Assembly: GCA_047495785.1 (NCBI GenBank)
Contig: JBLDXI010000105.1
Span: 1 to 64,000, forward strand
DNA: 64,000 bases
Reading direction: 5' to 3'
Origin: Lepidodermella squamata
Taxonomy: Eukaryota > Animalia > Gastrotricha
Part shown: positions 479-64,000 of the stretch, piece after piece
How the letters are laid out: every line of letters starts with the position of its first letter
How positions within the stretch are numbered: the stretch's first letter is position 1
Made by a program: the position numbers and the translations under genes
Notes under the pieces: generated by a model
Seen by the model: only the letters and a program-made list of their open reading frames with translations
The model's database searches: none
Told to the model about the DNA's origin: nothing

Positions 479-979
479 TAAATCTTGTTTATAACACGTA
501 ACGCGTTTATTCTAACGTTTCGGTTATACTCCCATAACCATCTTCAGGGATTGGTTAGGAAATCGAAATTTGAGGTTAAGTTAATAAATAAGAATGTTTT
601 AAGGCATCTTGAAATTGTAATCTGGCTAGTTCTCCATCTTCTTTTTACACCTTCTCATGGAATATCGGCTCTATGGAATATTCAGCTAAGTTATTTACGG
701 AGCCGATATTAAACCCTGATTAATCGTTAGAGGTTCGGCTCGGTTAACGTGCGATGTTCGGTGAACCATGATAACCTTAGGCCAACCCGGTTGAACTTAT
801 CCGTCATTTACCTGGGCATAGCCGCCGAGCAGCAGCTAAGAAATGTGAACTCGCAGCAACGAACAAGCAGCAGCAAGAAATTTGATGTCACCAGCTTATT
901 CGGATAAGCCGTCTCTTATCGAACCATAACTGTTACATGATACCAAACCTCCAATTTTATTGAAACAAAAACTAAACTT

Positions 980-17878: not shown

Positions 17879-19450
17879 CTATTTAATGTTGAATGTCAAT
17901 TTAGCGAGCTCTCGCTGTTCTCTAGTTGCTGTAGCACCTCGCCGCTTACAAACAGCCGCGCCGGATTGGTCAGTGACAGATGCCGTCACAGAACACAACT
18001 GTTCAATAGCAGCCGTTAGCTTCATGACTTCAGCCGAGTTAGGACCATGCAGCTTTGAGCACATCACCGAGAAAGCAGTGTCAATATATTGTTGAGCTTC
18101 TGTTACTTTCGAAGATTTTTTAGCATCGTTGCAATCTAAAATTATTTTCTCGGTTAAAGAGGAATCTTATTGAAGCGAATTCACAAACCGCGAAAGAATA
18201 GCTTACAAGTGAATAGAGCCGCCTCGATTAGTGTAGGGCTCCATGATGCAAAAGCTTTCGAGGTCTCTTCCTCGGCTTGGGCAACCGGCTGAAATAAATT
18301 GCAATAGGTTTGGATAGGAATTTCTAAAAAACCTTCTACCACAAATTCAGGATTCATATCGAGAAACAGTGGCAGGCAATCAGGGTGCACGAAAAACCGT
18401 CCTGATATCCCAGGCATAGCTGAGAATGCGATTGTTATCAATTTCCAGTTTCGAGACACCAATTCCGCTGCTTCAGAGTTATTTAACTGGAAAGACTCTG
18501 GAGCATGCACAATTAAAATGTAAACATAACATTGGGCATCACCGTTTGAGAATAATTCGTCGCATTGCGTTTGAAAGGAGCCACTATTTAAAATTTCATG
18601 ATGGATTTCTTATGAATAATAATGATTGAGTAGCCCCTTTCAAACGCAACGCGACGAATTATTAAACTGAACATTATCTCTAAAACTTGATTGAAAGAGA
18701 GCTTACGTTGCATGAAGGTTGAAAAAACGAGTGCTTTCCGCATCAATGCACGCAGGTTGTCGAACATTAAGTCGGTCAAATTGGTTCGATCGCGAAGAAC
18801 AGCCTCCAAAGCCGAGTTCGTCCGCAACGGCAGCTGAACGAGAAAGGACTTACATTACCCAGAACCCAGAGGTTTCTCTAGTATTACTCACGTGTTCAAG
18901 ATCATGAAGCTGAAGTTGTGTATCAATAGCTAGTTTCAACGTCGTTTCGAAGTTTGAGCCGTCCTTTGTTTGAGGACTGTTATCGATCTGTGCGGAAACG
19001 TCCAAGGATTCATCAGCGAGGAATTTGCCTAAAATGAACAATATTGTCTAATAATTGCTGGGAAAACAAATGTTTCGGGAGCGGAGAGAAATTAATTAAA
19101 TTAAGGGCTATATTAGTTCATCAACTACGGTCTTCCAGATATAAAATCACACCCATTACGTATTAGGACTCACTTTTCATTCCAGCATCTAGGCATCGCT
19201 GAAATCGACATTTGGTGCACATAGATCGGCGTAGAGCGCGGTTTGTTTGAAGCTCACCAGAATTCTCGTATTTATGCCGGCATTCCAAGGATCGCCAATT
19301 TTCCACATTTCGCCTGAAAAACTTCTGGCAAGCGTGGCAGATTCGAGGCTGGTAACGGTGCCGCTTCATAACCGAGAGGCCACATACCTTGCACTTGGTA
19401 GCACCTGGTGGAGAGGTTTGGGAAACTTCATCGTCCCAGCCATCCATCAT
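17879..19450 (-). CDS. Divergent nuclear receptor-like gene NR4, 6 exons
   Basis: Exons 19450-19174, 19028-18892, 18833-18707, 18497-18340, 18288-18189, 18135-17879; in frame; P-box CHACQK. Confidence 0.9.
18551..18663. mobile_element. Short hairpin/MITE in intron 3 of NR4
   Basis: 28-bp inverted repeat AATAATTCGTCGC(A/G)TTGCGTTTGAAAGG with one mismatch. Confidence 0.7.
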
Positions 19451-22660: not shown

Positions 22661-24054
22661 TTATTTGACGTTGAATGTCAATTTAGCTAGCTCTCGTTCT
22701 TCTCTGCTTGCCGTAACAGCTCGTCGCTGAACAAATGCTGCGCCGCATTCATCAATAACAGATGCCGTCACGGAACACAACTGTTCGATAGCAGCCGTTA
22801 GCTTCATGACTTCAGCCGAGTTAGGACCATGCAGCTTCGAGCACATCACCGAGAAAGCAGTGTCAATATATTGTTGAGCTTCTGTTACTTTCGAAGATTT
22901 TTTAGCATCATTGCAGCCTAAAACAATTCCCCCAGTCAAGTTGTTATGTCATCCAAGCGAATTTACATACCGCGGAAGAGTAACTTGCAAGTGAATAGAG
23001 CTGCCTCGAGAAGCGTGGGGCTCCATGTTGCAAGTGCTTCAGAGGTCTCCTCCTCCGATTGTACAGCCGGCTGAAATCAATTGCAACAAGTTCGGAAATG
23101 AATTTTCAAGAAATCTACTAGTACCACAAATTCAGGATTCATATCGAGAAACAGTTGCAGACAATCAGGGTGCACGAAAAACCGCCCTGATGTCCCGGGC
23201 ATAGCTGAGAATGCGATTGTTATCAATTTCCAGTTTCGAGACAGCAAATCCCCAACTTCAGACTTATTCAACTGGAAAGACTCTGAAACGCAATTAACAA
23301 GTATCTAATAATGAGCATGCTTAGTGAAAATTCTCTCTGAAATTTGAATAAAACAAAGCTTACGTTGCAAGAAGGTCGAAAAAATCTGCCTTTTCCGCAT
23401 CAATGCAATGATGTTGCCGTACATTAGGTCACTTAAAGTGCTTGGATCGCGTAGTACCTCCAAAGCCGTGTTTGTTCGCAAGGGCACCTGAAAAAAATAA
23501 AAAGAACTTACTTATTTAATCTATAGAAGTTTATTCAGCATAACTCACGTGTTCAAGATCATGAAGCTGAAGTTGTGTATCAATAGCTAGCTTCAATGTC
23601 ATTTCTCGGTTTGAGCCGTCTATTGTTTGAGGACTATGATCGATTATCTCGACGATCTCGAAAAGTTCATTAGCGAGGAACTTGCCTAAAATGATAAAAT
23701 TATAAATGTAATGATACGCAAATAAAATGGCTCTTTGACTACGGCTTTCCAGCGATATAATCGAAGCCACTATAGGTAAGACTAACATTTCATTCCAGCA
23801 TCTAGGCATCGCTGAAATCGGCATTTGGTACACATAGATCGCCGATGAGCACGGCTTGTTTGAAGCTCACAAGAATTCTCGTATTTATGCCGGCATTTCA
23901 AGGATCACCAATTTTCTGCATTTCGCCGAAAAAACTTCTGACAAGCGTGGCAGACTCGAGGCTGGTAACGGTGCCGCTTTAAAACTGCGAGGCCACATAC
24001 CCTGCATTTGATAGCCTCTTGTAAAAACGTTTGGGACACATGATCGTCCATCAT
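22661..24054 (-). pseudogene. Nuclear receptor-like NR5 with one in-frame TGA in the DBD exon
   Basis: Exons 24054-23787, 23685-23549, 23487-23364, 23282-23125, 23070-22971, 22917-22661. TGA at 23907-23905 where NR4 has CGA; the rest is open. Confidence 0.88.
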
Positions 24055-25229
24055 TTCAAAAAAATAACTACTATAAAAACCTCTTTAGCTAATTCAACTT
24101 CTGAAGTATGATAAATAGCGATATTTAGCATTCTGATAAGGGATTTTTAATAATTTGTATAATTCCTTAAACCGGGAGATTTTGCGCCCGAAAGCAAGAA
24201 AGAGAAGAATTGGAAAGTAAGTTCTACAAATAGTAAAGCACTGAAGCACTTTGAAGTTTCTCAATAAAGCGTGCACAAATATATATGAATTATGTTTGTA
24301 TGAATTTCGAAGTACTTTTATGTCTAAACTGAAATGAAGAGATAGCTTAGCGTGCTCACTTTTCAATGAGCAAGAAAGGGGCTATGCTCTGTCGTGGCAG
24401 GTTAAGTAGAAGTCATGTGTTTTGTAAATCGATAGGAACTGGCTAAATGAAGAAGGCGACGTTCGAAGCAATTCTTCTCATTCGCATGGTGCGCATAGAA
24501 TGAAAATGTAGGATGTTCACAAAAGCAAGGGATCAAGAAAGCATTTCCGCATTGGATGATGACGATTCATACCCCTTCGTAACTTTCATAATTGAGAATA
24601 GGTTACATAGCTTTTTTTGCTTTTTACAAGCAATTATTTATTATGAGACATTGGCAAAAATAGGTACGAAAATGTAGCCTGCGAAGCCAGCTAAGTTAAT
24701 TGCAACGGCCAGGATAACAATTCGAATAAATTTAACGAAAAAACCCCAAAAATGACTTTGCCATACGCCCATTGATAAAATGGTTGGCACGTGCTGTCAA
24801 TTTGTTTGCGCCTTCTGGCATTCAGCGGCTTCTGACCTCTCCTGTTCATTATTTTTATCCCAATATTTTTAACAAATTTGTAGACTCCAGAATAGGAACC
24901 TAAAGGTGGAATGATTTGAAAATTTGATAGGAATGGGTTTATTTAGTTATGTTATTATTCAGTGTCCGTGTCACCTTGATTAATGTAACAGCTTCGCACG
25001 AGCATACACCTTCATTGCAGTCAAATTTGCCGCGCGTTGTTGCCGTAATTTGATTGCTCGTGCATAGAAATAAGCCTGTAATTTATCGATCTGTATTGCC
25101 TTCATATACTACTGACATGTATGTACGCACACGCATGAATACATCCGGGCTGATCACAAAGCAGCTTTTTATTCCCGCAGCGATTATAGCGCATAAAAGC
25201 TGCACTCGCTTTCGAACAGCATTCATGAA

Positions 25230-27960: not shown

Positions 27961-29497
27961 ATGAAAGCGATGAGTAATATCTACAATAACTGCAAAGCTT
28001 GTGGCGTTCCGGTGCCGAAACGCCTCACTTATCAACCTCGAGTCTGCTCGGCGTGTCACAAGTTTTTCAGGCGAAATGCCGCGAATTGGCAATCACTGCA
28101 ATGCAACCACAATAGCGCAAATGCTGATCAAGCTAATATCAACAGAACTCTCAGGCGCACCATGTGCACGAAATGCCGATTCGACAGATGCCTTCGAGCT
28201 GGCATTAAGAGTAAGTTCGATGCATAGACAAATCAATACTCTATATAGATCGAAAAATAACGATCTTCTTTAAAATTGGGCACGCGACCTCAATTCTTAT
28301 TCACTCTTCTGCCCATGCAATTTTTCCATTTTTAATTATTTTTTAAAATTCCCAGAGAACAACTTTCATTTTCCCCAAATTCCAATACTTTTCCCGAACT
28401 TTCCCGGATTACTACTGCAGCGCTCTTCTGACGAATGAGTCCCGGCTTTCCAACTTGTTTCAGCACCCTATTAACGATTTATTTTAATCACATTTAGGTA
28501 AGTTTTTGACGAGTTACGGGATGATAGACCACTTCCCAACACTGGTCGATCTCTCCCTTGCGGAGGTGACCTTCAACAAGGCGATCGATGCGCAACTTCA
28601 GCTCCACGGACTGGAACACGTGAGTATCAGGAATTTAGGTCAGCAATTTTTTACCCTATTTAATTTCAGCTGCCCATGAAATACTACTACAACAAGGACA
28701 TGATGGACTTCAATTTTCTGCGAAAACTGATGGCGGGTAACGTTGCCGGCCTAGTCCGCCTCAGCTCGGATTTCGCAGGAAAAGTTCAAGGTTGGACTGA
28801 TTTACTGAAAGATGTGAAGTGAAAATTCTTAGACGATTGTTCAGAATCCTTCGAGTTGAGCCCATATGAAGCTCAACGTTTAGCTGCTCGTAACTGGAAA
28901 CTTGTCACGGTCGCTTACTCAGCTTTACCGGCAACTAGCGGGTGTTTATTAGCAAATCCCCATATTCTGCCGTTTTTTCTTGAGTGCAATCCTGAACTCT
29001 TGGTTTGTTTTTCCTCTTTCCGCTTCGATGCGATTTCAGCTATTTTCGATTGAAATCATTTTTTTATTATATTTTAAGCCAGCAAACGAATTCGGAAATA
29101 AAGTTGCAAGGGCTATGAGCGGGTGGAACCCATCGCTTATCGAAATTGCTCTCTTCACCTGTCGGCTGTTTTTCAAAGGTAAATTGTCGTCCAGTTTGAC
29201 TCAGTCTCATGAATTCACTCGGACACTTCAGATTGCGATGACGAAGGACAATCACCGGGCGCGCGATATGCAAAAGATTGCGTTTCAAACGCTTTCGAAA
29301 TGATTTGCAGGAAGCTGCACGGACCTAGATGGAGCCAAGTCATGCAGCAAGTTTCTGTTGTCGAGAATCTCATCGCCATATCTGCACGAGTTATTGAAAA
29401 CTGCGGGGCAGCGGTCTTGAAACGACAAGCGGCCTCTTCAAGCCGCGAGGAACTCGCCCTTGCAGTCAAATTCACTAAGGGCGTTCCTATTATATGA
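27961..29497 (+). CDS. Divergent nuclear receptor-like gene NR6, 6 exons
   Basis: Exons 27961-28210, 28498-28619, 28670-28790, 28845-29002, 29079-29178, 29232-29497; P-box CSACHK; start may be 27970. Confidence 0.87.
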
Positions 29498-30851: not shown

Positions 30852-32370
30852 ATGGACGCAGAAAAATCATTCCCCAATGAAACCAAGCCGCGTTTAAGGC
30901 AATGCGGGGTTTGTGGTCTCGAAGTGGCGAAACGTCGCGGTTACCAGCCCCGAGTCTGCTCCGCTTGTCACAAGTTCTTCAGGCGTAATGTCGAGAATCG
31001 GCAATCACTAAAATGCAAGCATACATCTGCAAGTGCTGGCGAGTCGCAAACCAACAGCGCAGCCATGCGGCGTAGCATGTGCACGAAATGCCGATTTGAC
31101 AGGTGCATTAAAGCTGGCATGAGGAGTAAGTTTTTCTCCACAATTTCAATCAACCCAGTCCTGTAGATAACAAGCTCGTAACTGGTATAAAAGCTAATGA
31201 GTATGTGATGCGAAGCATGGCTGCATGTCTGAAAAATAGAAATTTCAATTTTAAATTCGAAACCAGGCCTATCTTTCCGTCCTTTTAATACCTAAAGAAA
31301 AAAGAGGTAAATAACCCTAGAGGAAACAATACGAAGAGTAATTATGGCCTCAGTGAATATCGAACTCATCTTAGTCCAGCTTGATTGCTAACAGGTAAAT
31401 TCTGGTCTGGCGCAACGGTGCAAATTGACCAATGCCCACCAGCATTCGAGTACGCACATGTCGAGGGAACTCTAAGAAAAGCGATTGATGCTCAACTACA
31501 GCTTCATGGTTTTGAACACGTGAGATTTCTAATATTCCGAAAGGCCGAAGTACTAAACCTTTCATTTCAGCTGCCAATGATGTGCCATCACAACCCCAGA
31601 GCCCTGAGGGACGAAATGTTCTTGCGAAGCCTTATGACCGGAAACGTTACTGGCATCATGCGCCTCGGCTTGTTGTTCGCAGCTTATATTGAAGGTTTGA
31701 CCATTTCTGTTATTGAGAAGTTTCACTCTCAGCTATGCTATAAGAATCTTTCAAATTGAGCCAGTTGGAAGTTAATAGCCTGTTAACGCGTAACTGGAAG
31801 CTTATCACGGTCGCTTACTCAGCTTTGCCAGGCACTAGTGGATGCTTGCTGGCGAGTGCCGATGTTCTTCCGTTATTTCTACAAAGCAATCCCGAACTCT
31901 TGGTGGGGTGTACGATTTCCTGACCGAGATAAGTAATGATGTTTTTGCGTTTCAGCCGGCGAACGCTACCAGCAAAAAAGTTGCTGATTCCATGGCGGAG
32001 TGGAGCCCATCGCTGATCGAAACAGCTCTTTTCACGTGTCGACTGTTTTTTCAAGGTAAATTCTAGCGCCATGATTCGATGAAATATTTTACAATACCTA
32101 GACCTGAATGCCGAGGAACCATCCAGCGCAAATTTACGAGCTGCACGGGAGAGTGTCGATAAGGCATTCGAAATGACTTGTCGGAAGCTTCACGGCCCTA
32201 AATCTGGTCAAGTGATGGCGCAACGCTGTGTAGTCGAGAACCTCATCGGAATAACGGCGCAAGTTGTTGACGAATGCGCCGCAGCTGTTTTGAGGCGGCG
32301 AGCAGCAGCGTCCAGCCGCGAGGAACTCGCCCTAGCCGTTGAATTCACCTTAGGCATCCCTTATCTATGA
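30852..32370 (+). CDS. Divergent nuclear receptor-like gene NR7, 6 exons
   Basis: Exons 30852-31125, 31395-31519, 31571-31694, 31745-31902, 31956-32055, 32102-32370; in frame. Confidence 0.9.
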
Positions 32371-37273: not shown

Positions 37274-39339
37274 ATGAAATTTGTACCTATCAGAACTCAA
37301 GAAATGACAGAGGATAGTAAGGATTTTAAAGACAACCCGGCGATCGTAAAATCTGCTGTAGATGGGAAGCCTCACCGATGCAATGTCTGCGGCCTTCCAG
37401 TGGCAAAGCGCCGCGATTACCAGCCGCGAGTTTGCTCCGCGTGTCACAAGTTTTTCAGGCGAAACGCCGAGCACTGGCAGTCGCTGCGATGCCTTCACCG
37501 GCACGACAACGCCAGCGGCTTGCAGACCAACTCGGCCATGCGGCGCAGCATGTGCACGAAGTGCCGCTTCGAGAGATGCATCAACTCCGGAATGAGGAGT
37601 AAGTTCTATTCTTCCACTTTTCCTTTCCTCAAGCATCGCAAAGCTGGCTTCGGAAGAAGCGTTGCTAGAATAATCCACAATTTATTTTCTAGTTCGACGT
37701 TATTTAACCTGAATTTTTGTTTATTTGGCTTGCTAATAACGCATTTCTTTGCTAATTGAATGCTCTGGAATCAATACCTCATCAAATATATTTGAAAATT
37801 ACGGTTATTTTCAGGTAAATTTATGGCTAAGAAACGAAATGCTGCAGAGCTGAATAACGACATGGAAGTTGCAACAATTGAAGGTACGCGATTAGAAGGT
37901 ACGCTGAGGAAAGCAATCGAGATGCAGTTACAACTACACGGTCTGGATCATGTTAGTACTGTGCTTGATATTCGATATGATTTATTCGAACCCATGTTCT
38001 TTAGCTGCCGATGAGATTTCAATACTGCAGGGAGCAAATGCGCGACAGTGACTTCACTGCGCAGCTTCTGATTGGCAATATTTCTGGAATGTTGCGGCTA
38101 GGTTGGGTTTTTGCCAGACACATTCAAGGTAAGCAAACCAGAGCCGCAAGGCTAAACCGTCAAGGAAGTAGATTTCACCTGAGATCAAATGTTGTGATGG
38201 GTGTTCAGCGTTTCACCTTAACGTTTTAAGCGCCGTGGATTTTAACGTATACTGTACATGTGATGCCGAATGCCGAGGTTCAACCCCTATATTACTATAT
38301 TTTCTTGTAGGTCTTTGAATTCTAAGATTATCCGTCTCGATTGTTCTAGCTCATCCTTATTAAGTACGGGCTGAAAAAAACCTACTCTTATTACAGTATA
38401 CGGCGTTTGGCAAACTATTCGCAACTTGCATGGTACATACTATACTTCTGTTCTGCTCTTTTCACAGATTGCTTTCATTTAAAAGAGTCTACAGTTCGAA
38501 CTCTTCTGGCTCGCGGCTGGAAGAACATTTGTTTGGCATACTCAGTCCTGCCCGGAAACAACTGCTTCATGCAAATAAATCCTGAAATCCTACCAACGTT
38601 TCTCGATCAGTACACTGAACTTCGTGTGAGTTCTTATAGACATCATTTGACAGGTTATACTATAACAAAATTGTTTCTAGCCAGTAACCGCTGCGGGAGA
38701 AAACTTGGCGGCTGCTATGAGCAAATGGAACCCAAATCTCGTCGAGGCCGCTCTGTTCACTTGCCGGCTGCTTTTCCAAGGTAATTTCATGCCACGAATT
38801 CTCAAGATTTTCGTGTTTGTTTCAATTCAACATAGTAGAGAGATACTGACCTAGGTTCTAAATTACTCGTCACTGGGCAAAGCTCGGTGACAGAAACTTA
38901 AAGAAACGCCCGGACTGAGGCATGTGGCTACGAAGAATACGAAGATTATTCGGAGGTTATGCCATGAGAAAAGACGGAAATAACATTTTCAGAGGCAAGA
39001 TTTATACTATTGGACAATGCCAGTCAATTTACGTTCGATATAACTAAGCTTTTGTATAATATTTTATTTCAAGGCGCCAATGCAATTAATGATTCACCCG
39101 AATTGCTAACGGCGCAGGAATCCGTTGAGAAAGCTTTCGTAGCAATAAGCCACAAGCTGCATGGGTCGCAATTGCAGCAGGTCATTCATCAGGCGCACGT
39201 GGTTGAGAATCTTATCGGCATAACCACGCACGTGCTCAACGAATGTGCTTCGTCAATTCTGATGCGTCGGGCCAAATCCAGCGGTCGAGCTGAAATGCCG
39301 CTCAGCGCGAGATTCACACTTGGCATCACAACTATTTGA
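37274..39339 (+). CDS. Divergent nuclear receptor-like gene NR8, 6 exons
   Basis: Exons 37274(or 37304)-37598, 37815-37951, 38005-38128, 38468-38625, 38681-38780, 39074-39339. Confidence 0.88.
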
Positions 39340-42283: not shown

Positions 42284-44900
42284 ATGCTCAAGGATTCAGA
42301 ATATCAGATGGCGGTCGCAAAATCTGCAGTAGAACAGAAGCCTCACAGATGCAACGTCTGCGGCCTTCCAGTGGCAAAGCGACGCGATTACCAGCCGCGA
42401 GTTTGCTCGGCGTGTCACAAGTTTTTCAGGCGAAACGCCGAGCACTGGCAGTCGCTGCGATGCCTCCACCGGCACGACAACGCCAGCGGCTTGCAAACCA
42501 ACTCGGCCATGCGGCGCAGCATGTGCACGAAGTGCCGCTTCGAGAGATGCATCAACTCCGGAATGAGGAGTAGGTTCAATTCTTCCACTTTTACTTTTCT
42601 CAAGCATCGCTCGCACATTTTCAGGCCCGCCTAGGTTTCCTCCATGCGCTTAAAATAGGCGGGCCTGTGCGCATCGCAAAGCCGGCTTTCGGTCTAAGAA
42701 GAAGCGTTGCAGGAATAATTTCGACGACAGGTGCACTTCGAAGCATGCATTGTTATATCTCAGGGGGTATTTAGACTAAAGGGGTATTTTCGGTACCCAA
42801 TTTTATGGCCAAAGAGCTCCTCCGGGGTTTTTTCAACTTAGGCCTGGAGATCGAGGAGGGAGTGGGGTACGATACCTCTCATTCCCCCCGTACTTCGCGC
42901 CCTGTTTGTGAACACCTTATTAGCAAATCTACAATTTTTTCGCAGGTAAATTTATGGCGATGAAACACAATGCTGTAGTGTTAAATATCAACTTGGAAGT
43001 TGCAACAATTGATTCCCCACTAGTGGAAGGTACTCTGCGGAAAGCAATCGAGATGCAGTTACAGCTTCACAGTCTGGAGCATGTTAGTTCTGTGCCGCAT
43101 ATTCGATATGATTTATTCAAACCCATGTTCTTTAGCTGCCGATGAGATTTCAATACTGCAAGGAGCAAATGAGGGACAGAGACTTCAATGCGCAGCTTCT
43201 GATCGGCAATATTTCAGGAGTTTTGCAGCTGGGTTCGGTTTTTGCCAGCCGCGTTCAAGGTAAGTAAATTACCCTATATGGACAAAAACATGTAACCGGT
43301 AACCGTAAATGAAGTGGATTCCACTCAGATCACACGGTGTGATGGGAGGTTCTGATTCAAGGCATGTTCTCGTATATGTTGGCTTAGATGGCTGCGTTGC
43401 AATTTATTTATCAATCAAAACTCAACCCTTGCATTATGAGTGGGACCTTCGGCTCTATATTGAGATTAACGTCGCACTGTTGCACAGAACCGCTTTCAAG
43501 CAAAAATTACTAAAAATTTCCGACTGTCACTTCTTTTAAGTGTTGATATGATTGTGTGGAGAGGATTAAGTACTAAGTAGATTAAACTGTCTAACTGCGT
43601 GATTTATGCGACTTTGAAACCTCAAACAGGCTGTGGGGTGCCACTTGAGAAATACAGGTATTTCAGCACCTGTCTTGTAATCCGGTCATGCCCTTTTGGA
43701 ATGATTGACCTCTGCCTTAACGGGACTTCACTTAATTTAGGTTTTTATCGTAGAGGTGGAATGCACGATGTGATGGGGTGGATTAAGTTTTTGTTTTCGC
43801 TCCCGAGTTTATGAGACGAAATTTTTTATTTTTTTATTTATTTTTCTTTCGTCTAGACCTCTCGTATCCCCGTAATTCGCAAGCTGAATCATAGCTTCAT
43901 AAGTAGATAAATTTTCCGCCTTCCAGCCATCAACAGCTTTGTTTTCAGTTCCTTATCTCTTATTGTATAGTATTACACTTCTGTTCTGTGCAGATTGCTT
44001 TCATTTAAAAGAATCCACAGTTCGAAATATTCTGTCTCGCGGCTGGAAGAATATTTGTGCGGCTTACTCAGTCTTGCCCGGAAACAACTGCATCATGCTA
44101 GCGAATCCTGATATTTTACCTATGTTTCTTGATCACTACCCCGACCTTCGCGTAAGTTCATTCGATTAAGATATCATTCGATGGGCAGTATCAAGAATTA
44201 CTCTAGCCAGTAACCGCCGCTGGAGAAAACTTGGCGGCTGCTATGAGCACATGGAACCCAAATCTCATCGAGGCCGCTCTGTTCACTTGCCGGCTGCTTT
44301 TCCAAGGTAAATTCAAGCTACGAATTCTCAAGCTGTTTGTGTTGTTTGATAAAATCAATTAAGCACAGTAGATAGCTATATAGGTTCTGGAATTTTCGTC
44401 ACTTGGCAACGCTCAGTCTTCGCTCAGTGCCAGAAACTAATAGAAGAAACCCTGATAGGACTGAGGCATGTGGCTTTGTTGAAACCCGATTCGGAGAATT
44501 TGCCATTAGATAAAGTCTGAAGTAAAATCAAGCAGCTTGGCGCTTGTCAAGTTTTAATCTCCTGGGGCATGAATTTCAAAACTGTCCCAGCCTGTATACG
44601 TTCGATATAACTAAGCTTTTGTATCTTTCGTTTCAAGGCGCCAATGCAATGGATGATTCACCTGAATTACTCGCAGCACGAGAATCCGTTGAGAAAGCTT
44701 TCGTTGCAATATGCCACAAGCTTCATGGGTCGCAATCGCAGCAGGTCATTCACCAGGCTCACGTGGTCGAGAACCTCATCGGCATAACCACTCACGTGCT
44801 CGACGAATGTACATCTTCGATTCTGAGGCGTCGGGCTAAATTCTGCGGACGAGCTGAGCTGTCCCTCGGCGTCAAATTCACACTTGGCATTATAGCCTGA
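42284..44900 (+). CDS. Divergent nuclear receptor-like gene NR9, 6 exons
   Basis: Exons 42284(or 42308)-42569, 42946-43082, 43136-43259, 43994-44151, 44207-44306, 44638-44900. Confidence 0.88.
42613..42670. mobile_element. 58-bp minimal derivative of the 36075 MULE-like element, in intron 1 of NR9
   Basis: GCACATTTTCAGGCCCGCCTA...TAGGCGGGCCTGTGC flanked by duplicated GCATCGC. Paralog NR8 has the empty site (AAGCATCGCAAAGC). Confidence 0.8.
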
Positions 44901-45617: not shown

Positions 45618-45766
45618 TGTCGAAATCTGGGGATAAAGTGAAGACTCACAATTGTAACGTCTGTGGACTTCCAGTGGCAAAGCAGCGAAATTGCCAGCCG
45701 CGAGTTTGCTCGGCGTGTCACAAGTTCTTCAGACGCCACGCTGAGCCCTGGCAGTCTCTGCTTTAA
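45618..45766 (+). pseudogene. Truncated receptor locus NR10, first zinc finger only
   Basis: MSKSGDKVKTHNCNVCGLPVAKQRNCQPRVCSACHKFFRRHAEPWQSLL*. No second finger or downstream exons found. Confidence 0.85.
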
Positions 45767-46527
45767 TTAAATCAGCATTTAGCGAAACAAGAACATTTTG
45801 AAGATTTCCCAAATCCTCCTAAAACTCTCCTCGGGTTGAAAAACTGCAAAGCATAAAAGCATATGGCAAACTATTTGGGAAGCGTTGTATAGCGGCACGT
45901 GGTGAGTTGAGAATGGTTCGAAATAATAAGGGTTAGCGGACTCAAATATGAGACAAGAGTTTCGACTTGTTTTGAAAAAATTGAAGGTCAGGCCCAACAC
46001 TTCGGGCAGTACTACGGTATATTTGCTTTGGAAATGGAAAGCAGTTTCAAAGACGCGCTATTTTTGAATTTTCAAACCTCCCAGATTGGCGAAAATCCTG
46101 ATGTGTGATTTATCGTTGTCAGTGATTTGATTTGATTGATTTGGTTCGTGAAAGTGGGACATGCGATCGCTTCACGCTTCACCAAATGCCACGAGCAGTA
46201 CGTGTCGAGCGGCTCGGCAGCTGAGAGGACTGTCCGCTTCGCCTACTTCTACGATGTGATGACCTTGCTGGCGGACGTAGTGATGTACAAAAACAAGTGA
46301 GTTATTCTATTTATTTGTCGGTAATCAATGATCTCGCAGTTTTCATATATTTGTATTTTGAAAATTCAAGAACCTGGTTGATCCACGCAGCAAGGTAACT
46401 GCTTCAGGACCCTCCGAGGTTCCGAGACCCTATCAGAGTAACCGTGGTCAGAGATTCTCCACCCTGGACAACCCGGCAGCCAGTATTACTATCACCAAGA
46501 TGGTTATAGTAGTAACTTAAAGGAATA

Positions 46528-48512: not shown

Positions 48513-50475
48513 ATGTCATGCGAAGTCACTTCAACGCTAGATTCGCCCGAAAAGGCAGAACGAGTACTTGATCCAAAGAACTGTAACGTTTGCGGCCTTG
48601 AAGTGGCGAAACATGGCGCTTATCGAGCCAAAGTCTGCTCTGCATGTCACAAATTCTTCCGACGCAATGTCGAGCATTGGCAGTCGCTGCAATGCTACCA
48701 CAAGCACGGCGCTTTTTCTGGCGAGCGGCAAATCAGCCGTGCCATGCGGCGTAGCATGTGCGCGAAATGCCGTTTTGAGAGGTGCATCCAAGCAGGAATG
48801 AGAAGTAAGTTCGAAATGTATCATTGCTGTCCCAATTTCCCACGCTAAGCATTGAAAAGCGCACTAAGCACCCAGAAAATCATCAACGATGTCCATTCAG
48901 TATTTTAGTATCCAATAATTGTTAGACAAATGCTGAGCATTTCAAAAGTTGAAGCTGATTATAGCCTGAAGTATGCTAGTAGCCTAATGCTTTTAAATGC
49001 TTTTATTTTCATATAAAATATGAAACCAAAAACTAAAATGTACAATTTCCCCATTTTTTCATTATGAAAATAGTCCCAGAGCCTCCTCAAAATGATCAAA
49101 AAACTTCTAACTTCATACCTTGAATTTTGGCTACAAACCGGGTTTTCCACACGAATGATGCGCGAGATTCTTTGCTGCCTCGCTTGAATAATGAACAATA
49201 AAAGAACCCCGATCACAAGTAACTTGTTTCATAATTCAAGAAGCTATCTATAGTTGGCAAGTATTATTTTGCAAATGTGCGCGATAACGGTCAAAAAAGA
49301 AATGCGGCCGCAAGGCACAGCACTCACGGCACCATGCATGATAGTGGAGCTAAAGGACTATGCCACCAGTGGTTTTTTAATATAGTCATCCATAGCTAAG
49401 AAAATCAAGATACTTTCAATTTTGTATACTTTTTAGGTAAATATCTGGTGAGTGATTCTTTGATACTTGCGCCAAAAGTTGACACCGGTTTGAAAACTGA
49501 TGAAATGTCTCTCGTCGAGGAAACTTTGAAGAAGTCGATCGACATTCAGCTGCAGCTTCATGGCCTCGAACATGTGAATTCGTACCCTAAAACTGTTCAA
49601 TGCTTACTCTATGATATTTGTTATATGTTAGCTGCCCTTGAAACGCCAGTACAGCAAAGAGGAACTGCCGAGGATAGACATTATGAAATTGATGTTCGGT
49701 AACATTGCCGAGACCATGAAACTTAGCATCCCTTTCGCGAACCACATAAGAGGTGAGTGATGCAACTAAAATTTGCTACTGGTATAACAGCAGCATATTC
49801 TTGAAGAATCTTTCAGATTAAGCCAGCCCGAAGTTGAGAGACTGATTTTGCGAAACTGGAAACACGTTGTATCCGCATATTCAGCTTTACCTGGCACAGA
49901 CGGATACATGTTAACTAGTCCTCAACTGCTACCAATTTTTCTTGCGGCAAACCCTGAATTTCAGGCGAGTTAAGTCGGAAATCCAAACTACGCCAGTCAA
50001 TTTCGTCGAGTTTTTGGTTTTTGTACATCTCTAATTTTCTTGCATTCTGCAGGCTTTAAGCACTCCTGCAGCAAACACAGCGAATGCTATCAGGTTGTGG
50101 AATCCAACCCTTATCGAGGCTGCTTTGTTTACCTGCCGGCTTTTCTTCCACGGTTTGTTCGGTATTTCTCAGTGAATCAATAGAACTTGGTTTACTTTTG
50201 TTTTCAACCATCAATGTATGGTTTCAGGCTCCTCCGCAACTGACGAGTCGCCGGGCGTGCGGGCAGCGCGGAAATGTGTCGATTCAGCTTTTCATATTGT
50301 TTCTCAAAAGCTCCACGGCTCTGAAACATCGCCGGTTCTTCACCGCGTTTCGGTGGTTGAAAACCTCATCGCTGTAGGGTCAAGCCTTCTTGAAGAGTGC
50401 TTGATCGCTGTGTTGCGCCGAAACGAAAAATCATTCGACCGCAAAGAGCTTCCGCTTGGAATTTCATCGACTTGA
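48513..50475 (+). CDS. Divergent nuclear receptor-like gene NR11, 6 exons, GC-AG intron 4
   Basis: Exons 48513-48804, 49437-49573, 49632-49752, 49807-49964, 50053-50152, 50228-50475. Donor after exon 4 is CAG|GCGAGT. Confidence 0.85.
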
Positions 50476-51302: not shown

Positions 51303-54300
51303 ATGTCATTTGAAGAACAAGCAGCAAATGATGGCGCAAAGATAAAGCGGTCTTCAGGGTCAGAAAGGCCCGAAGAGAAGGCTCCCTGCCAAGTTTGTGG
51401 TCTCGCAGTTCGAAAACGTCGCGGATATCAGCCGCGGGTGTGCTCCGCCTGCCGCAAGTTTTTCAGGCGCCATGCTGAAAGTTGGCAATCGCTGAACTGC
51501 AACCACGAGCTAACGCATGCTGATGGACTTCAAGACAGCAGAGCCATGCGACGGTTCATGTGCGCAAAATGCCGATTTGAAAGATGCATTCGGGCTGGCA
51601 TGAGAAGTAAGTGAAATGGGAACCGTGCAGATTACTACTCTCAGCCTTGTATCTCTATCGAATCACATATTCCGAATCAAAACTAATCATTCATTTTGAA
51701 TTTGGTTCGTTACCATCATTTTTGTTCTTCATTTTTGAATTAGAAGACCAAAGATGAGAGGCTCCTTTAACATCAGTGTTAGAAAGATGTATAGATTTCG
51801 GAATTTCAACTTTGAAAATTTGCAGAAAATTCAATTTGATAAATTCTTGATCGCCCTTTTGAGGAATTTGCTTTTCGCTGTTGGCTACGGGGCAGACTTT
51901 TCGGTCTGCTACTTTTTCTATGCCTAGACCTAGACCATACTTTCTGCTAGAAACTAAGACCAACACCAAGACCAAAATCAAAAGTAAGTCTTTCGTTCAA
52001 GACCAAAGACCATAGACCGATAATTTCAATTACGCATGACTTCATTGTTGATTTTTCGCTATTTCTTCTATTTTGAACATTTCTACTGCAAAAGCCAGCA
52101 ACCAGCAATCAATTATTTTAAAAGCTAATTATTGAAACTAAATTTCTTATTTATTGCTGTAATTTCTCTAGTTTCGCGTCTTAGAAAGCATAAACAATTT
52201 TAACTGTACCCACAACACAGGATTAAGGCTTGAGTCCTCAAGAGCGAACGGAGCACAAAGCTGATACCACCTGTTGACAGAACAAACAAATGCCGCTAGG
52301 CTGAGGAGAGTCTTGTGAACTCGGCACCCTAGTCAAATGCTTTCACCGCTGTTGACTTGAAACTCAAAACTTGAAATTTGGGCTCCAGTGACTAGGCAGA
52401 TTAAAATAATTGTTATACTTAATTTGATGCGATTTGTTATTTTTTCGGCTATGCATATGTAAATTAGAAAGCAGTTGGGGCTTTGAGTCACTTATTGATG
52501 CGGCGTTTAGATGAAATCGCCAAGAAGTAGCCAACTCACTGCGCAAGCATTATTTCGAGTATCGAGCTTGGAGAAAACTGTGGTCAAGCCAACCACAGGA
52601 GGACCCAATGGCCAAGGGTCGGGGACGGGCAAGCCAGCCCAGGGTTCGAGCCAGCGAGCAGCGGGACAGCAGTTGAGCAAAAGTCAGCGGAAGAACAGGC
52701 GAAGGCGGGTGCGTAATGCGGCTAAGAAGGCTGCCGAGACTGGTAAGAAGGCACCAGTAGTTGAGCAGGTCGAAGCCGAGGCCGAGTCTGAGTCGGAATT
52801 CGAGGCAGAGTCGTCGATGGATGTGTCGAGGATTAGCAATAGCGGGTCAACGAGCAGTCGCTTGGGTGCCAGTCAGGACGAGCGACGCCAGGATGGTCCC
52901 TTGCGTGCCAGTCAGGGCAAGGGCCGTTCGGGCAGCAAGTTGAACAGTAATTCAAAGGAGCTTTTGAACGATCTGTGGGGTCGCGCGGCAGTCGCAGCGG
53001 CTAGTGTTATTTTTTCGGACAAGTCGGAGAAAGACTTTATCAATCAAGTCAGTATAATTCTGGCTGGAATGGCCGTGATGAAATATCAGGGTCAGAGAGA
53101 TATGACGGAATTTAGCTTCGACTTGGCATTTGTGAAAGCCCAGCTGTATTTTGAAGAATTCCGAAAATGCCAAAAGCAGTAAAACTTGGACTGTGGAACG
53201 GCTACGGAATTGCCAGTAGGCCGTACGAGTTTCAGTTAGCGGTAGATGAGTCAGAGTGCGAGGTGTTCTTCGGGGTAGAGTCGTGGTTCAAGGCAGCCAC
53301 GCAGATAGAGTTGCCTGGTTTCAAGTTGTTCACCTTCAACCAGGTGGTCGACGGAATCGAGGCGGGCAGACGGGGTTTAGCAGCCTGGGTGAAAGAGGGC
53401 CTTGAGGTCGTCCGACAGCGGAACGGCACAGGCGAGAACGTAGAGTGGATGGCGTTAGATGTAGCATGCTCGGGTCAGGAGACGGTGACTTTTGTTACGG
53501 TCTACGTCCCTAACGGCGAGCGGGCCTTCGATGCAACATTCCTACGAGAACTGGCGTTGCACGGGCCGGTGGTGGTTTGTGGTGATTTCAACTGTCACCA
53601 TAGGCGACTGTGGGCAGGAGATAAGCGGGACAACGGGGCAGGTAGAGAAGTGCTCAGGCTTGTAGAGGATGGCTCGTTAGAGCTCATTAGCGCTGGGGTA
53701 CCGACGCACAAGCATGGCGGGCAGCTAGATCTATGGCTAGCTTCGCCGGACTTGGCCGGTCAGTTCGGTGTACCCGATGTGGGCGGGTGCTACGGCAGTG
53801 ACCATAACCTGGTTGCCGTCGATTTCGAACTTAGCGCTAGTCGTTCTCCCTATCCCAAGGTGAGGTTCGACTATAATAAGATGAACGAAGGATTCTATCA
53901 GGCAGTTGTGACAGATAAGCTGCTGAAGATTCCCTTGCCTGCAATAGCGAGTGATGAGGAGGTACGTAGGTTCGATGGCGAAATCAATAAAGCCATGCAG
54001 GAGGCACGTGATAGATCAGTGCCAACGGTGTTAGCAAAACAGCTGAAAAAGTACAGGTCGACACCGCAGATGGCTGCGTTGATCGAGCGTAGACATAAAG
54101 CGTTGCGGCAGTACCGTTCTACGGGAAACCCTGTGTTTCAGGCCAGGGCGGACGCGTTCTATGCTCGTTTCAAAGAGTTAGCAGCCTTAGCTGAAGAGCG
54201 CAAGCACACGCGTAACCTTCAGCGGATGGAAAAGCGTAGAAGGGTAGATTCGGGGGCGTTCTTCCGGGCTTTTCGTGAGATCACAGCGGAGAGTGGGTCG

Positions 54301-57300
54301 GCACCAGGACCAGCGATCCGCACCCTGACCAACGAGGCAGGTGAGCTGGTTGTCGGTGACGCGGCTAGAGCCGAGTTGTTCCGCGATCATTACAAGTCTC
54401 AGTTGAACCCTAAGCCGAAGGTCGAGAATGATCCAGAGATCAAGGCACATCATGCCGAGGTCGAAAGGATTGTTCAAGAGGATCGGGAGTTGTTTAACCC
54501 GATTGAGACCAAGAAGATTGACGTGAAAGTCATGATCTCAAGGGCTGAGATGAGAAGCGCGGTTCGACGTTTGAAGCTCAAGGCTCCAGGCCGTGATGAG
54601 ATTTCGAACGTGCTCATCAAGAAGGGTGGGCCGGTACTTTGGGCGTATCTGCGCCATTTGTACAATTATAGCCTAGCTTGTGGGTTCGTGCCGGAGAGGT
54701 GGAAGTTGGCCGTTATCGTCCCGCTTCCGAGGTCAGGGAAGGACTTGTCGAAACCGTCAGGTTACCGTCCCGTGTCGCTTCTTCCGACAGTTGCGAAGCT
54801 GCTAGAGCTCATTTTGGCTACTAGGCTAGCTCTTCTTTTCAGGTCAAATAATATAATTCCTGATCATCAGTCTGGTTTTCAGATACGCCGATCGACGAGC
54901 GATCAAACTTTCCGATTCTCGCAGGCCAGAGCGATGGCGCGGCGTCGTCGAACGAAGATGGTGATGATCGCGGCCCTGCTGGATTTCGAAGGCGCCTTCA
55001 ACGCGGTGTGTCACAACTCGCTGCGCGTGAAGCTTCGAGACTGCGTCGCTGTTCCAAGATCAATGGTGCGCTGGGTCTCGTCCTTCCTGACCGGCCGGAC
55101 CTTTACGGTCAAGGTGAGTAGCTCCTTCAGTGAGACAGCAGATATCGGCTCAGGGGTTCCGCAAGGATCCTCATTGAGCCCTATACTCTTTGCCTTTTTC
55201 ACAGCGGACTTGATGCCGGACAACAACAGCGACGAGCGCAAGGCCTTCACCGCTTCGTTCGCTGACGACGTGCTCTTGTTCGCTGTGGCTTGCTACACTG
55301 GGATGGCGAAGCAGCGGGTGCAGACGGCGCTGACGCGGGTCTCTCGATGGAGCAGACTCTGGAAGTTGCCGCTTAGTCCGCCGAAGTGCCAAATGCTGCG
55401 GTTTGGCGGACAAGTCAACGACGACGACCGGCTGTTTGTGGGTGACGAGAAGCTGCCGAAGGTCGCTGCGGCGAAGTACCTTGGTGTCACGTTTGACGCG
55501 ATCGGGTCGTGGAAGCCGCATTTCGACAACATCGAGGCGGATGCGCGATCTCGACTCGGGGCTCTTCGCCGGGTCTGCTTTCCGGGTTCGCCGCTTGGCT
55601 TTGCCTCGCGGAAGTTGCTGTATCTGACGATCGTGAGACCGGTTCTTGAGTACTCCTGTGTGGCCTGGTTGGATGCGTCGTATGCGCAGAAAAAGCGCTT
55701 GATCGTGCTGCAGAACAACTGTTTGCGGGCGATCATCGGCTCGTCTATTCTGGACAAGCAGGACGAATCTGAGCTCTACCGCCTAACGGGAGTGGAGCCG
55801 CTGGAACGCCGCTGGCTGAAACTAGCAGTCGGCTTTGCTGATCGGGCTATGCAGTTCGTGCCACCAGTCGCCGCCATGATCGCCGACCATCGTCGAGAGT
55901 GGGGCGTGGCTGGTACCCCGCTCGGACAGTTCATCAATTTTGTGGGCCGTTAGGCCTTGTCTATCTATGTATTTATATGAGCATCAGTCAGTTTAATACA
56001 GAAAATAAAACAACAAAAACCCATACACAATACACATATATACACAAAATAAAATAAAAAACAAAACCACATTAGCCCTGTGCCACGACTGTAAATGAGT
56101 GTGTGCGTTGTCATATATATTTCTTGTTTTTTATAAAAAGATGAAACGCATAACATATGCTGTAATTGTTAAGATTTGCTGCATTTGATATCATTGCTAC
56201 TACTGTCGGTCAGAAGTTGTTAAACAAGAGACCGTTTTTCCAATAAAACAAGACCGTTGGAAGAAAAAAAAAATCGAGCTTGGAGCTTGAGGCTAAATAA
56301 TAGCCCATCAGCCAATTAAACGATAAAAGAAAAGGAAAAGAAAACTATCTTCCTGATGCTGACAGAAAATGTCGCGAGGTAAAACTGGGAATACTGAATT
56401 TAGATCTGAATGCTGAGCCTTTGAAACTTTTCAAATTTAATGTTTTCAGTGATATAAAAGTGAGGAAGAATTTTAGGGACATTCATGAGAGTACAAGAGC
56501 TACAAACCTAAATTTTTCCATCTTCAGGCAAATTTCTAGCAGATGAAAACCCTGATTCAGCGATAATTCCGATCGGCCAGTTCCCAAGCGATCGCAACAC
56601 TTCAGCGATCGAGACGACATTGAAGCAAGCGATTGACGCGCAGCTGCAACTTCACGGTCTAGAACACGTATGTCTTGATAATTGGTTGCAGGTGCCTTAA
56701 TGAGCTAATATACATATGCTATAGCTACCGATGAAATGCACCGATAGGTTAAGCGATTATCGAATTGATGAATTTCTTAAGAAACTAATGATTGGCAACG
56801 TTGTGGGCATCATGAATCTCGGTGGCTTGTTTGCGATTCACGTCAAGGGTGAGTGAGCTGCCAAAGAAAAAGAAACTGAACGATAAAAATCCACTCTCTT
56901 TATTTTTTATAAGAATCCTTCAACTTGTGCGAAATGGAGGTCCAGCATCTAATATCTCGTAACTGGAAGGGCATTACTGTCGCCTACTCGGCGCAGCCGG
57001 GCACAGGCGGCAGCTTGCTAGCTAATGCCTGCATTTTGCCGAGTTTACTGGAGCATAGCCCAGAGCTTCTGGTACGCTTTCATGTTTCATGTTCGAATTT
57101 TGATATTACGTGAATTATCAAACCATTCCTGTTAAAACATAGGCAGAGTTCTCATTTCTTAATTTTGCGTTTTTCAGCCTGCAAACGCATCAGAAATCCA
57201 TGTATCTAACGCTGTGAGCCAATGGAATCCATCGTTTATCGAAACGGCGTTGTTCACGTGTCGTTTGTTTTTCCAAGGTAGGCATTCATTGGCTAGTGCT

Positions 57301-63981: not shown

Positions 63982-64000
63982 GTGAGAATCTAAAAAAACG

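What the first reader, a model, noticed from the sequence alone, without database searches (positions are those of the whole stretch)
37377..37598. Second zinc finger lacks Cys6; invariant C-x-H suggests a rebuilt Cys3His site
Known: canonical NR spacing is C-X2-C-X13-C-X2-C-X15-C-X5-C-X9-C-X2-C-X4-C. Seen: C-X2-C-X14-C-X2-C-X15-C-X-H-X(~17-20)-C-X2-C-X4-C. The His two residues after Cys5 is present in every complete DBD (CRH, CYH, CNH, CKH, CLH) while its neighbours vary freely, so there is no D-box. The usual HYG reads YQP. Inference: His is the fourth Zn ligand, and the long variable loop replaces the D-box dimer interface, altering half-site spacing or partner choice.
Basis: partly seen in the sequence, partly recalled or inferred. 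Interest (0 to 1): 0.85.

Follow-up and report, generated by a model that had tools for sequence, protein, structure and literature searches.

The report
Nuclear receptors with a relocated zinc ligand
The window holds a tandem array of 14 copies of a divergent nuclear-receptor gene whose second zinc finger has lost one canonical cysteine and always carries a histidine two residues after the preceding cysteine, most likely as the replacement zinc ligand; I found the same layout, with cysteine instead of histidine, in a separate bivalve receptor clade.

Summary
All 12 complete DBD exons in the window read C-X2-C-X14-C-X2-C-X15-C-x-H-X18-20-C-X2-C-X4-C. None has a Cys at the Cys6 position.

- **Genes.** These are real nuclear receptors under purifying selection. 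They pass the Pfam zf-C4 cut-off, the DBD folds like solved NR DBDs, and they form six-exon genes of about 333-396 aa. The LBD fold is supported indirectly, through a sister protein.
- **The His.** It is invariant, encoded by both CAC and CAT, while its neighbours and the following loop vary freely. The closest relatives, from metagenomic eukaryote contigs, keep Cys6 and lack this His, so the state is derived.
- **Independent parallels.** A bivalve NR1 clade has C-x-C plus a 17-20-residue loop and no Cys6. Single domains of two multi-DBD proteins have C-N-H, C-C-H or C-C-C in place of Cys6. Only 7 of 198 canonical fingers have His or Cys at +2.

His as the fourth Zn ligand is therefore the best reading (about 0.6), but it is not shown: the tools gave no coordinates, metal or RNA data.

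A CHC2 second finger is already published for flatworm HR96b. There His is described at a canonical ligand position, so this is a new variant of a known kind. This scan had already noted the same C-x-H finger in other arrays of this genome. The claims about the D-box and dimerisation remain inference.

The parts
37274..39339 (+). Focal gene. Six exons: 37274-37598, 37815-37951, 38005-38128, 38468-38625, 38681-38780 and 38993-39339. The spliced ORF is 396 aa: DBD, hinge, then a divergent LBD.
   Evidence: Splice sites and open spliced frame. Downstream exons conserved among paralogs by tblastx.
37370..37597 (+). DBD core of the focal gene (76 aa). Finger 1 uses Cys at 37379, 37388, 37433 and 37442. 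Finger 2 uses Cys41 at 37490-37492, His43 at 37496-37498, Cys62 at 37553-37555 and Cys65 at 37562-37564. The non-ligand 'Cys9' lies at 37577-37579.
   Evidence: Pfam zf-C4 E 3e-9. PDB sequence matches to Rev-erb, AR and GR DBDs. AF2 model with Foldseek TM 0.6-0.67 to RXR, GR and VDR DBDs.
37499..37552 (+). Variable 18-residue loop between His43 and Cys62, standing where the D-box and following segment normally lie. It ends in the invariant Arg-Arg pair.
   Evidence: Mean pairwise dN is 0.77 in the loop against 0.22 in the rest of the DBD. AF2 pLDDT is below 50 for residues 45-47 and 49-56. The loop DNA holds no GT donor, so no hidden intron.
42284..44900 (+). Paralog, 389 aa, intact six-exon model. 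Its DBD protein is identical to the focal copy.
59349..61654 (+). Paralog, 375 aa, intact six-exon model. Its DBD protein is identical to the focal copy.
27961..29497 (+). Paralog, 338 aa, intact (CNH).
30852..32370 (+). Paralog, 336 aa, intact (CKH).
48573..50460 (+). Paralog (CYH). All six exons are found as open HSPs. Intron 4 has a shifted phase. The end coordinate is approximate.
51378..57605 (+). Paralog (CNH). The DBD exon is at 51378-51605 and exons 2-6 at about 56515-57605. Intron 1 holds a LINE insertion.
63194..64000 (+). Paralog (CNH, 20-residue loop). It runs off the window end; the DBD and exon 2 are seen.
45644..45778 (+). Truncated pseudogene fragment. Finger 1 and the P-box are present, followed by a stop. 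No downstream exons.
686..2791 (-). Paralog (CRH). The DBD exon is at 2510-2737. All six exons are open and intron 5 is 55 nt. The low-end coordinate is approximate.
5460..7218 (-). Paralog (CYH). The DBD exon is at 6919-7149 and all six exons are open. The low-end coordinate is approximate.
8712..10858 (-). Paralog, 333 aa, intact model (CRH, P-box CQACQK).
17879..19450 (-). Paralog, 351 aa, intact model (CRH).
22664..24084 (-). Copy with an in-frame stop inside the DBD (after W36). It still reads CRH, and its five downstream exons are open. Probably a recent pseudogene.

Best explanation
The window is a head-to-head tandem array of a lineage-specific nuclear-receptor subfamily, with five copies on the minus strand and nine on the plus strand. 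Each gene encodes a zf-C4 DBD, a hinge and a very divergent LBD.

In this subfamily the second zinc module was rebuilt. The canonical second ligand (Cys6) was lost, and a His two residues after Cys5 most likely took its place. Zn2 would then be held by Cys41, His43, Cys62 and Cys65, an S3N site. The first ligand pair would be a tight C-x-H dyad instead of the C-X5-C D-box loop.

The 18-20 residues that follow are no longer closed by the metal. They evolve fast and are probably flexible. The Arg-Arg pair in front of Cys7 and the helix after it are kept.

What is shown: the pattern, the NR identity of the DBD, purifying selection, the derived state, and the convergent parallels. What is shown only indirectly: the LBD fold, modelled on a sister protein. 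What is inferred: Zn coordination by His, loss of a D-box-type dimer interface, and any change in DNA-site architecture.
For: 1. **Pattern.** It is invariant in 12 of 12 complete DBDs.
2. **His codons.** His43 is encoded by CAC x6 and CAT x6, while positions 42 and 44 vary.
3. **Selection.** The median pairwise dN/dS of the DBD is 0.16. Three copies have dN 0 at dS 0.07-0.14. The post-DBD region has dN/dS 0.16-0.41.
4. **No other candidate.** No other invariant Cys, His, Asp or Glu lies between Cys5 and Cys7.
5. **Derived state.** The nearest relatives are P0005-7, 9, 11, 12, 17-19 and 23, from metagenomic eukaryote contigs. They share the X14 first finger, a C-E-A-C-Q-K-F-F-R-R P-box region, the GMKSKF end and, where full length is available (the P0023 cluster), a homologous C-terminal domain. 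They keep C-X6-C-X8-C and have Ser, Thr or Gly at +2. In the DBD tree the window clade is one branch (SH-aLRT 100) joined to these relatives (89).
6. **Convergence.**
   - A bivalve NR1 clade (Potamilus, Sinanodonta, Mercenaria, Mactra, Mya, Dreissena) has C-x-C-X17-20-C-X2-C with no Cys6 and carries both Pfam zf-C4 and Hormone_recep. In the tree it groups with canonical bivalve NRs, away from the window clade.
   - P0004 domain 5 reads C-N-H, and P0101 domain 3 reads C-C-C. In both, Cys6 is replaced by Leu or Ser at unchanged spacing relative to a sister domain of the same protein.
7. **Background.** Among 198 canonical second fingers, 7 have His and 0 have Cys at +2. In a related family that keeps Cys6 ('KRF'), His at +2 occurs in only 4 of 10 members.
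8. **Fold.** The AF2 DBD model (pLDDT 77.5) keeps both helices and matches solved NR DBDs.
Against: - No coordinates, metal or biochemical data were available, so the geometry of His43 relative to Cys41, Cys62 and Cys65 is untested.
- AF2 confidence around residues 41-50 is only moderate (block mean 56).
- No RNA run holds the locus, so expression is not shown. Selection is the only evidence of function.
- The lower dS in the DBD exon than in the rest of the three youngest copies suggests gene conversion. That inflates apparent conservation among those three.
- The DBD tree includes some columns of the trait itself and rests on 72 columns.
Confidence: 0.6

Rival explanations
1. The second module binds Zn with only three Cys plus water or a variable loop Asp, Glu or His, or it no longer binds Zn at all. 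His43 is then conserved for another reason, such as a DNA-backbone contact or packing against helix 3.
For: Nothing shows coordination directly. The loop after His43 is modelled as disordered. Several copies have extra His, Asp or Glu in the loop.
Against: Cys41, Cys62 and Cys65 stay invariant at saturated dS, which is hard to explain without a metal site. Independent lineages that lose Cys6 always gain a Cys or His within two residues of Cys5, and in bivalves it is a Cys, which is not a typical DNA-contact residue. No loop acidic residue or His is conserved.
Confidence: 0.22
2. The conserved ninth cysteine (Cys70, C-X4 after Cys8) is recruited as the fourth ligand.
For: Cys70 is invariant.
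Against: Cys70 is invariant in all 60 DBDs of alignment A2, including the canonical C4 ones, so its conservation is not specific to the loss of Cys6. From my own knowledge of GR DBD structures and mutagenesis (not tested here), the equivalent Cys lies further along helix 3 and does not bind Zn. This rival also fails to explain the invariant His or the C-x-C parallels.
Confidence: 0.06
3. The array is decaying or non-functional, and the missing Cys6 marks dead DBDs.
For: Two of the 14 copies are broken. No RNA evidence exists.
Against: dN/dS is 0.16 for the DBD and 0.16-0.41 for the rest, across paralogs with saturated dS. Seven complete spliced models have open ORFs, and four further copies have all six exons open. 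Indels in the loop are all in frame.
Confidence: 0.03

Closest known systems
CHC2 second zinc finger of parasitic flatworm HR96b / Vitellogenic Factor 1 (PMC8363021, section 3.3; PMC10497141)
   Same: It is a nuclear-receptor DBD whose second zinc module has three Cys and one His, conserved across a clade. Its function is also unknown.
   Different: There the His is described as replacing a canonical Cys at canonical spacing, in a single orthologue group with extra DBD introns. Here the His lies two residues after Cys5, the Cys6 position holds Ala, Ser, Phe or His, the loop to Cys7 is lengthened to 18-20, and the family is a large tandem expansion. [quoted passage not shown]
Bivalve NR1 clade with a C-x-C second finger (for example P0097 from Potamilus streckersoni, and P0172 from Mercenaria annotated 'ROR-beta-like'), found here
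   Same: The architecture is the same. Cys6 is absent, a ligand-competent residue sits at Cys5+2, a 17-20-residue loop follows, then C-X2-C-X4-C. These are full NRs with a DBD and an LBD.
   Different: The +2 residue is Cys, not His. The first finger and P-box are canonical (X13, CEACK[AG]FFRR). The origin is separate in the DBD tree. I found no paper that notes this pattern.
Sister family from metagenomic eukaryote contigs (P0023, P0164 and others)
   Same: They share the X14 first finger, the C-E-A-C-Q-K-F-F-R-R region and the intron right after G-M-K-S-K. For the P0023 cluster, the C-terminal domain is also homologous (E 1e-10).
   Different: They keep a canonical four-Cys second finger (C-X6-C-X8-C) with no His at +2.
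Nematode supplementary nuclear receptors (HNF4-derived expansion)
   Same: They resemble this family in mode of evolution: large lineage-specific tandem expansions with varied P-boxes and fast-evolving LBDs.
   Different: No evidence of common descent was obtained here, and I am not aware of a C-x-H second finger being a described feature of them. This comparison rests on general knowledge only.
SWIM zinc finger (CxCxnCxH signature; recalled from memory, not tested)
   Same: It uses C-x-C and C-x-H dyads as zinc-chelating pairs, which shows that i and i+2 ligands are chemically plausible.
   Different: The fold and family are unrelated.

Membership tests
Nuclear receptor superfamily | The DBD matches Pfam zf-C4 (PF00105) above the gathering score. 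| tested here: met
   Scores are 37.6, 30.1, 22.1 and 39.5 bits against a cut-off of 21.1 for the four copies scanned. Sequence matches to solved NR DBDs reach E 3e-6.
Nuclear receptor superfamily | The first zinc module has four Cys, followed by a recognition helix with the KFFRR motif. | tested here: met
   C-X2-C-X14-C-X2-C and K-F-F-R-R are invariant. The spacing is 14, not the canonical 13. The P-box is non-canonical (C[SHQ]AC[HQR]K).
Nuclear receptor superfamily | The second zinc module has four Cys (C-X5-C-X9-C-X2-C). | tested here: not met
   No Cys lies between Cys5 and Cys7 in any of the 12 complete copies. In A2 the Cys6 column holds Ala, Ser, Phe or His.
Nuclear receptor superfamily | The DBD has the double treble-clef fold. 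| tested here: met
   The AF2 model has pLDDT 77.5 with helices at 23-32 and 63-72. The top Foldseek PDB hits are all NR DBDs, TM 0.55-0.67.
Nuclear receptor superfamily | A C-terminal ligand-binding domain with the helical-sandwich fold is present. | tested here: met
   This was tested indirectly.
- Pfam Hormone_recep is not detected on single exons or on the sister protein.
- An HMM of the paralog C-termini links them to sister P0023/P0164 (E 1e-10).
- hhalign against a canonical LBD profile gives E 9.8e-5, probability 58%, collinear over 146 columns.
- Language-model neighbours of P0023:120-435 are Hormone_recep clusters in 54 of 60 hits.
- An AF2 model of the sister LBD, aligned with window exons (pLDDT 67.8), hits only NR LBDs in the PDB, TM 0.5-0.6.
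Nuclear receptor superfamily | The DBD binds two Zn and binds DNA in a sequence-specific way. | not testable with these tools
   This needs protein biochemistry.
CHC2-type nuclear receptors (flatworm HR96b/VF1) | His substitutes for a canonical Cys ligand at canonical spacing. | tested here: not met
   Here the His is at Cys5+2 and the Cys5-to-Cys7 distance is 20-22 residues instead of 15. The definition comes from PMC8363021 and PMC10497141.
CHC2-type nuclear receptors (flatworm HR96b/VF1) | Orthology to HR96 (NR1J). | not tested
   No HR96 reference sequences were placed in a tree.
Bivalve C-x-C NR1 clade | Common descent with the bivalve clade. | tested here: not met
   In the DBD tree the window clade groups with the metagenomic sister family. 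The bivalve clade groups with canonical bivalve NR1 paralogs (SH-aLRT 96).

The most novel reading that the evidence does not exclude
C-x-[Cys/His] followed by a long free loop is a recurrent, previously unrecognised alternative architecture of the nuclear-receptor second zinc module. It would have arisen independently at least three times: in this genome's expanded family, in a bivalve NR1 clade, and in single domains of multi-DBD proteins. By moving the second ligand next to Cys5 it dissolves the D-box. That would yield receptors that bind DNA as monomers or through a new interface, and it would free a hypervariable surface loop for diversification.
Probability: 0.4. Interest if true: 0.72.

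Novelty: new variant of a known kind. Interest (0 to 1): 0.6.

Why it matters
The eight-Cys scaffold of the nuclear-receptor DBD is among the most conserved signatures in animal transcription factors, and the D-box loop between Cys5 and Cys6 sets dimer geometry on DNA.

A large, selected gene family that lacks Cys6 but always has His at +2, together with independent C-x-C versions in bivalves, suggests the scaffold tolerates a relocated ligand. It offers a natural experiment on how zinc-module wiring constrains DNA-site architecture.

There is also a practical point. Census pipelines that require the C4 pattern would under-count or mis-annotate such receptors.

Tried and rejected
- **Public protein search.** An exhaustive profile search of 1.84 billion representatives gave a best hit of only 80 bits, and no member of the C-x-H family itself.
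- **Metagenome DNA scan.** The JGI scan with A1 found 174 pattern hits, none confirmed.
- **Expression.** The sequencing-run search found one DNA holder and no RNA. Read laying was not used because DNA contigs would not test anything here.
- **LBD by Pfam.** Pfam on single downstream exons and on the sister full-length protein found no Hormone_recep hit. The LBD had to be approached by HMM, hhalign, language-model neighbours and AF2.
- **Hidden intron.** I considered a short intron inside the loop hiding a Cys6-bearing exon. The focal loop DNA has no GT donor, and loop-length differences among paralogs are in frame.
- **Cys9 as ligand.** See the rivals.
- **Published families checked.** Tardigrade 'Group 5' zf-C4 proteins carry a canonical C-X5-C motif. 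For rotifer NR1O only citations were retrievable. The oyster NR1P paper does not mention the cysteine pattern.
- **Organism.** It could not be fixed. Atlas neighbours of the DBD are nematode or rotifer clusters. The LINEs resemble arthropod-type elements. Earlier notes of this scan disagree, saying rotifer or nematode-like.
- **Zn geometry.** The structure tool returns no coordinates, so Zn-site geometry could not be measured.

Full report
**Observation**

Reading the stated coordinates and scanning all six frames shows that 37370-37597 (+) encodes a 76-residue nuclear-receptor-type DNA-binding domain. It ends at a splice donor right after G-M-R. The window holds 14 such exons:
- five on the minus strand, with DBD cores at 2510-2737, 6919-7149, 10592-10819, 19175-19402 and 23788-24015;
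- nine on the plus strand, at 27982, 30894, 37370, 42341, 45644, 48573, 51378, 59415 and 63194.

Twelve are complete. Their alignment (A1) has these invariant positions: C4, C7, C22, C25, C41, H43, C62, C65 and C70. The pattern is C-X2-C-X14-C-X2-C-X15-C-x-H-X18-20-C-X2-C-X4-C, with no Cys between Cys5 and Cys7. All four exons scanned pass Pfam zf-C4, and the focal exon matches solved Rev-erb, AR and GR DBDs by sequence. The loop is 18-20 residues. 'YQP' holds in 9 of 12 copies. Two further copies are broken.

**What the genes are**

tblastx among the units showed five conserved coding blocks downstream of each DBD exon. For the focal copy, canonical GT-AG sites join six exons into an open 396-aa frame.
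- Seven copies gave complete spliced models of 333-396 aa.
- Three more (DBD exons at 2510, 6919 and 48573) have all exons open, and their junctions resolved by eye.
- The copy at 51378 has its exons 2-6 beyond a LINE inserted in intron 1.
- The copy at 63194 runs off the window.
- Two copies are broken. The copy at 23788-24015 has a stop in the DBD. The copy at 45644 is a fragment.

The C-terminal part gives no Pfam hit, but several lines point to a divergent LBD:
- A profile of it finds the C-termini of the sister proteins P0023 and P0164 (E 1e-10 over about 220 residues).
- hhalign aligns it collinearly with a canonical LBD profile (E 9.8e-5, probability 58%).
- Language-model neighbours of the sister's C-terminus are Hormone_recep clusters.
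- An AF2 model of the sister domain, built with window exons in the alignment (pLDDT 67.8), hits only NR ligand-binding domains in the PDB.

The DBD model itself (pLDDT 77.5) has the two expected helices and matches RXR, GR and VDR DBDs at TM 0.6-0.67. These are therefore nuclear receptors in architecture and fold. They fail one defining sequence feature, the four-Cys second module.

**Are they functional?**

No RNA data could be found, so function rests on selection.
- Pairwise dN/dS of the DBD has a median of 0.16, with dS mostly saturated.
- The post-DBD region has dN/dS 0.16-0.41.
- Three young copies have identical DBD proteins despite dS of 0.07-0.14. Their dS is higher (0.22-0.41) in the rest of the gene, which hints at gene conversion of the DBD exon.

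**Is His43 the fourth ligand?**

This could not be tested directly, because the structure tool returns no coordinates. The comparative evidence is as follows.
1. His43 is encoded by CAC in six copies and CAT in six. Positions 42 and 44 carry five and six different residues. The loop after it has mean dN 0.77 against 0.22 for the rest of the DBD.
2. No other Cys, His, Asp or Glu between Cys5 and Cys7 is conserved.
3. An exhaustive profile search found no public member of this family (best 80 bits). It did find a sister family on metagenomic eukaryote contigs. That family shares the X14 first finger, the P-box region, the intron position and, for the P0023 cluster, the C-terminal domain. It keeps C-X6-C-X8-C and has Ser, Thr or Gly at +2. 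In a DBD tree the window copies form one clade (SH-aLRT 100) attached to that family (89), so C-x-H is derived from a C4 ancestor.
4. Other lineages show the same replacement.
   - Following one odd hit (P0097, a Potamilus NR with both Pfam domains) uncovered a bivalve NR1 clade. It includes Potamilus, Sinanodonta, Mercenaria, Mactra, Mya and Dreissena. Its second finger is C-x-C-X17-20-C-X2-C without Cys6. In the tree it lies with canonical bivalve paralogs.
   - In the five-DBD protein P0004 (and its cluster mate P0167) one domain reads C-N-H and another C-C-H. In P0101 one domain reads C-C-C. In the clearest cases Cys6 is replaced by Leu or Ser at unchanged spacing relative to a sister domain of the same protein.
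   - P0016 lacks Cys6 and has His two residues before Cys5.
5. Against this, only 7 of 198 canonical second fingers in the hit set have His at +2, and none has Cys. In a related family that keeps Cys6, His at +2 occurs in 4 of 10 members and so is not constrained.

Taken together, a ligand-competent residue next to Cys5 appears whenever Cys6 is lost. It is invariant only where Cys6 is absent. That is what a relocated ligand predicts. I put this at about 0.6.

**Rivals**

- A three-ligand or metal-free module, with His conserved for another role, stays possible (0.22).
- Recruitment of Cys70 is unlikely (0.06). That Cys is equally invariant in canonical DBDs, and to my knowledge it does not bind Zn in GR.
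- A dead array is contradicted by selection (0.03).
- A hidden intron in the loop is excluded for the focal copy, because the loop DNA has no GT.

**Consequences (inferred)**

With the first ligand pair reduced to a C-x-H dyad, the D-box loop is no longer closed by zinc. The following 18-20 residues are hypervariable, and AF2 models them at pLDDT below 50. The invariant Arg58-Arg59 two residues before Cys7 resemble the basic pair at that spot in canonical DBDs (alignments). A D-box-type dimer contact is therefore unlikely, and monomeric or LBD-driven binding is plausible, but nothing here tests it.

P-box residues differ between the two strands' clusters: CSAC[HR]K on the plus strand, and CHACQK or CQACQK on the minus strand. 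This suggests diversified DNA specificity.

**Comparison with what is known**

A Cys3-His second finger is already published for parasitic flatworm HR96b/VF1, where it is called CHC2 and was said to be absent from other animals (PMC8363021; PMC10497141). There the His is described as sitting at a canonical ligand position. The C-x-H dyad with an extended loop, and the bivalve C-x-C form, were not found in the papers I could search. I therefore class this as a new variant of a known kind.

The same C-x-H finger was noted by this scan in several other arrays of this genome. One of those was followed up as an undescribed NR branch, so the family is genome-wide rather than special to this window.

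The organism remains unidentified. The hints conflict between rotifer, nematode-like and arthropod-type LINEs.

Noticed in passing
window 13037-17520 (-) and 52511-55953 (+): Two LINE retrotransposons. Each has an intact ORF2 of 966 or 928 aa (endonuclease plus reverse transcriptase, Pfam). The first also has an ORF1 with CCHC knuckles. The second sits inside intron 1 of the receptor gene whose DBD exon is at 51378. Their language-model neighbours are arthropod-type elements.
   Followed up: partly
window 37274-39339, 42284-44900, 59349-61654: Three young paralogs have identical DBD proteins. Their synonymous divergence is lower in the DBD exon (0.07-0.14) than in the rest of the gene (0.22-0.41), which suggests gene conversion confined to the DBD exon.
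   Followed up: partly
window 22664-24084 (-): One copy has a single in-frame stop inside the DBD (after Trp36), while all five downstream exons remain open. It is either a very recent pseudogene or an assembly error.
   Followed up: no
window, all DBD exons: P-box residues differ by cluster. Plus-strand copies read C-S-A-C-H/R-K. Minus-strand copies read C-H-A-C-Q-K or C-Q-A-C-Q-K. The two clusters lie head to head around 24-28 kb.
   Followed up: no
proteins P0097, P0168-P0172, P0174, P0177, P0182, P0184, P0186, P0187, P0190, P0192, P0208: A bivalve NR1 clade has a C-x-C-X17-20-C-X2-C second finger and no canonical Cys6, conserved across unionid, venerid, mactrid, myid and dreissenid species. 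It is annotated only as 'ROR-beta-like' or hypothetical. I found no description of this pattern.
   Followed up: partly
proteins P0001, P0004/P0167, P0015, P0024, P0043, P0101: These predicted proteins carry three to six tandem zf-C4 DBDs, more than the published 2DBD receptors. Some domains have non-canonical ligand sets (C-N-H, C-C-H, C-C-C). They could be real multi-DBD proteins or fused gene models.
   Followed up: no
proteins P0022, P0025, P0026, P0028, P0046, P0054, P0055, P0062, P0068, P0144: Another undescribed-looking family has an X14 first finger, a CEACKRF P-box region and a loop of about 20 residues between Cys6 and Cys7, ending in W-R-x-x-C.
   Followed up: no
protein P0067: This DBD has a His where Cys5 normally sits (H-X6-C), a different one-ligand swap in the second finger.
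   Followed up: no
window 48573-50460 (+): This paralog appears to have shifted the phase of intron 4 (donor GTTAAG, phase 1) relative to all other copies (phase 0).
   Followed up: partly
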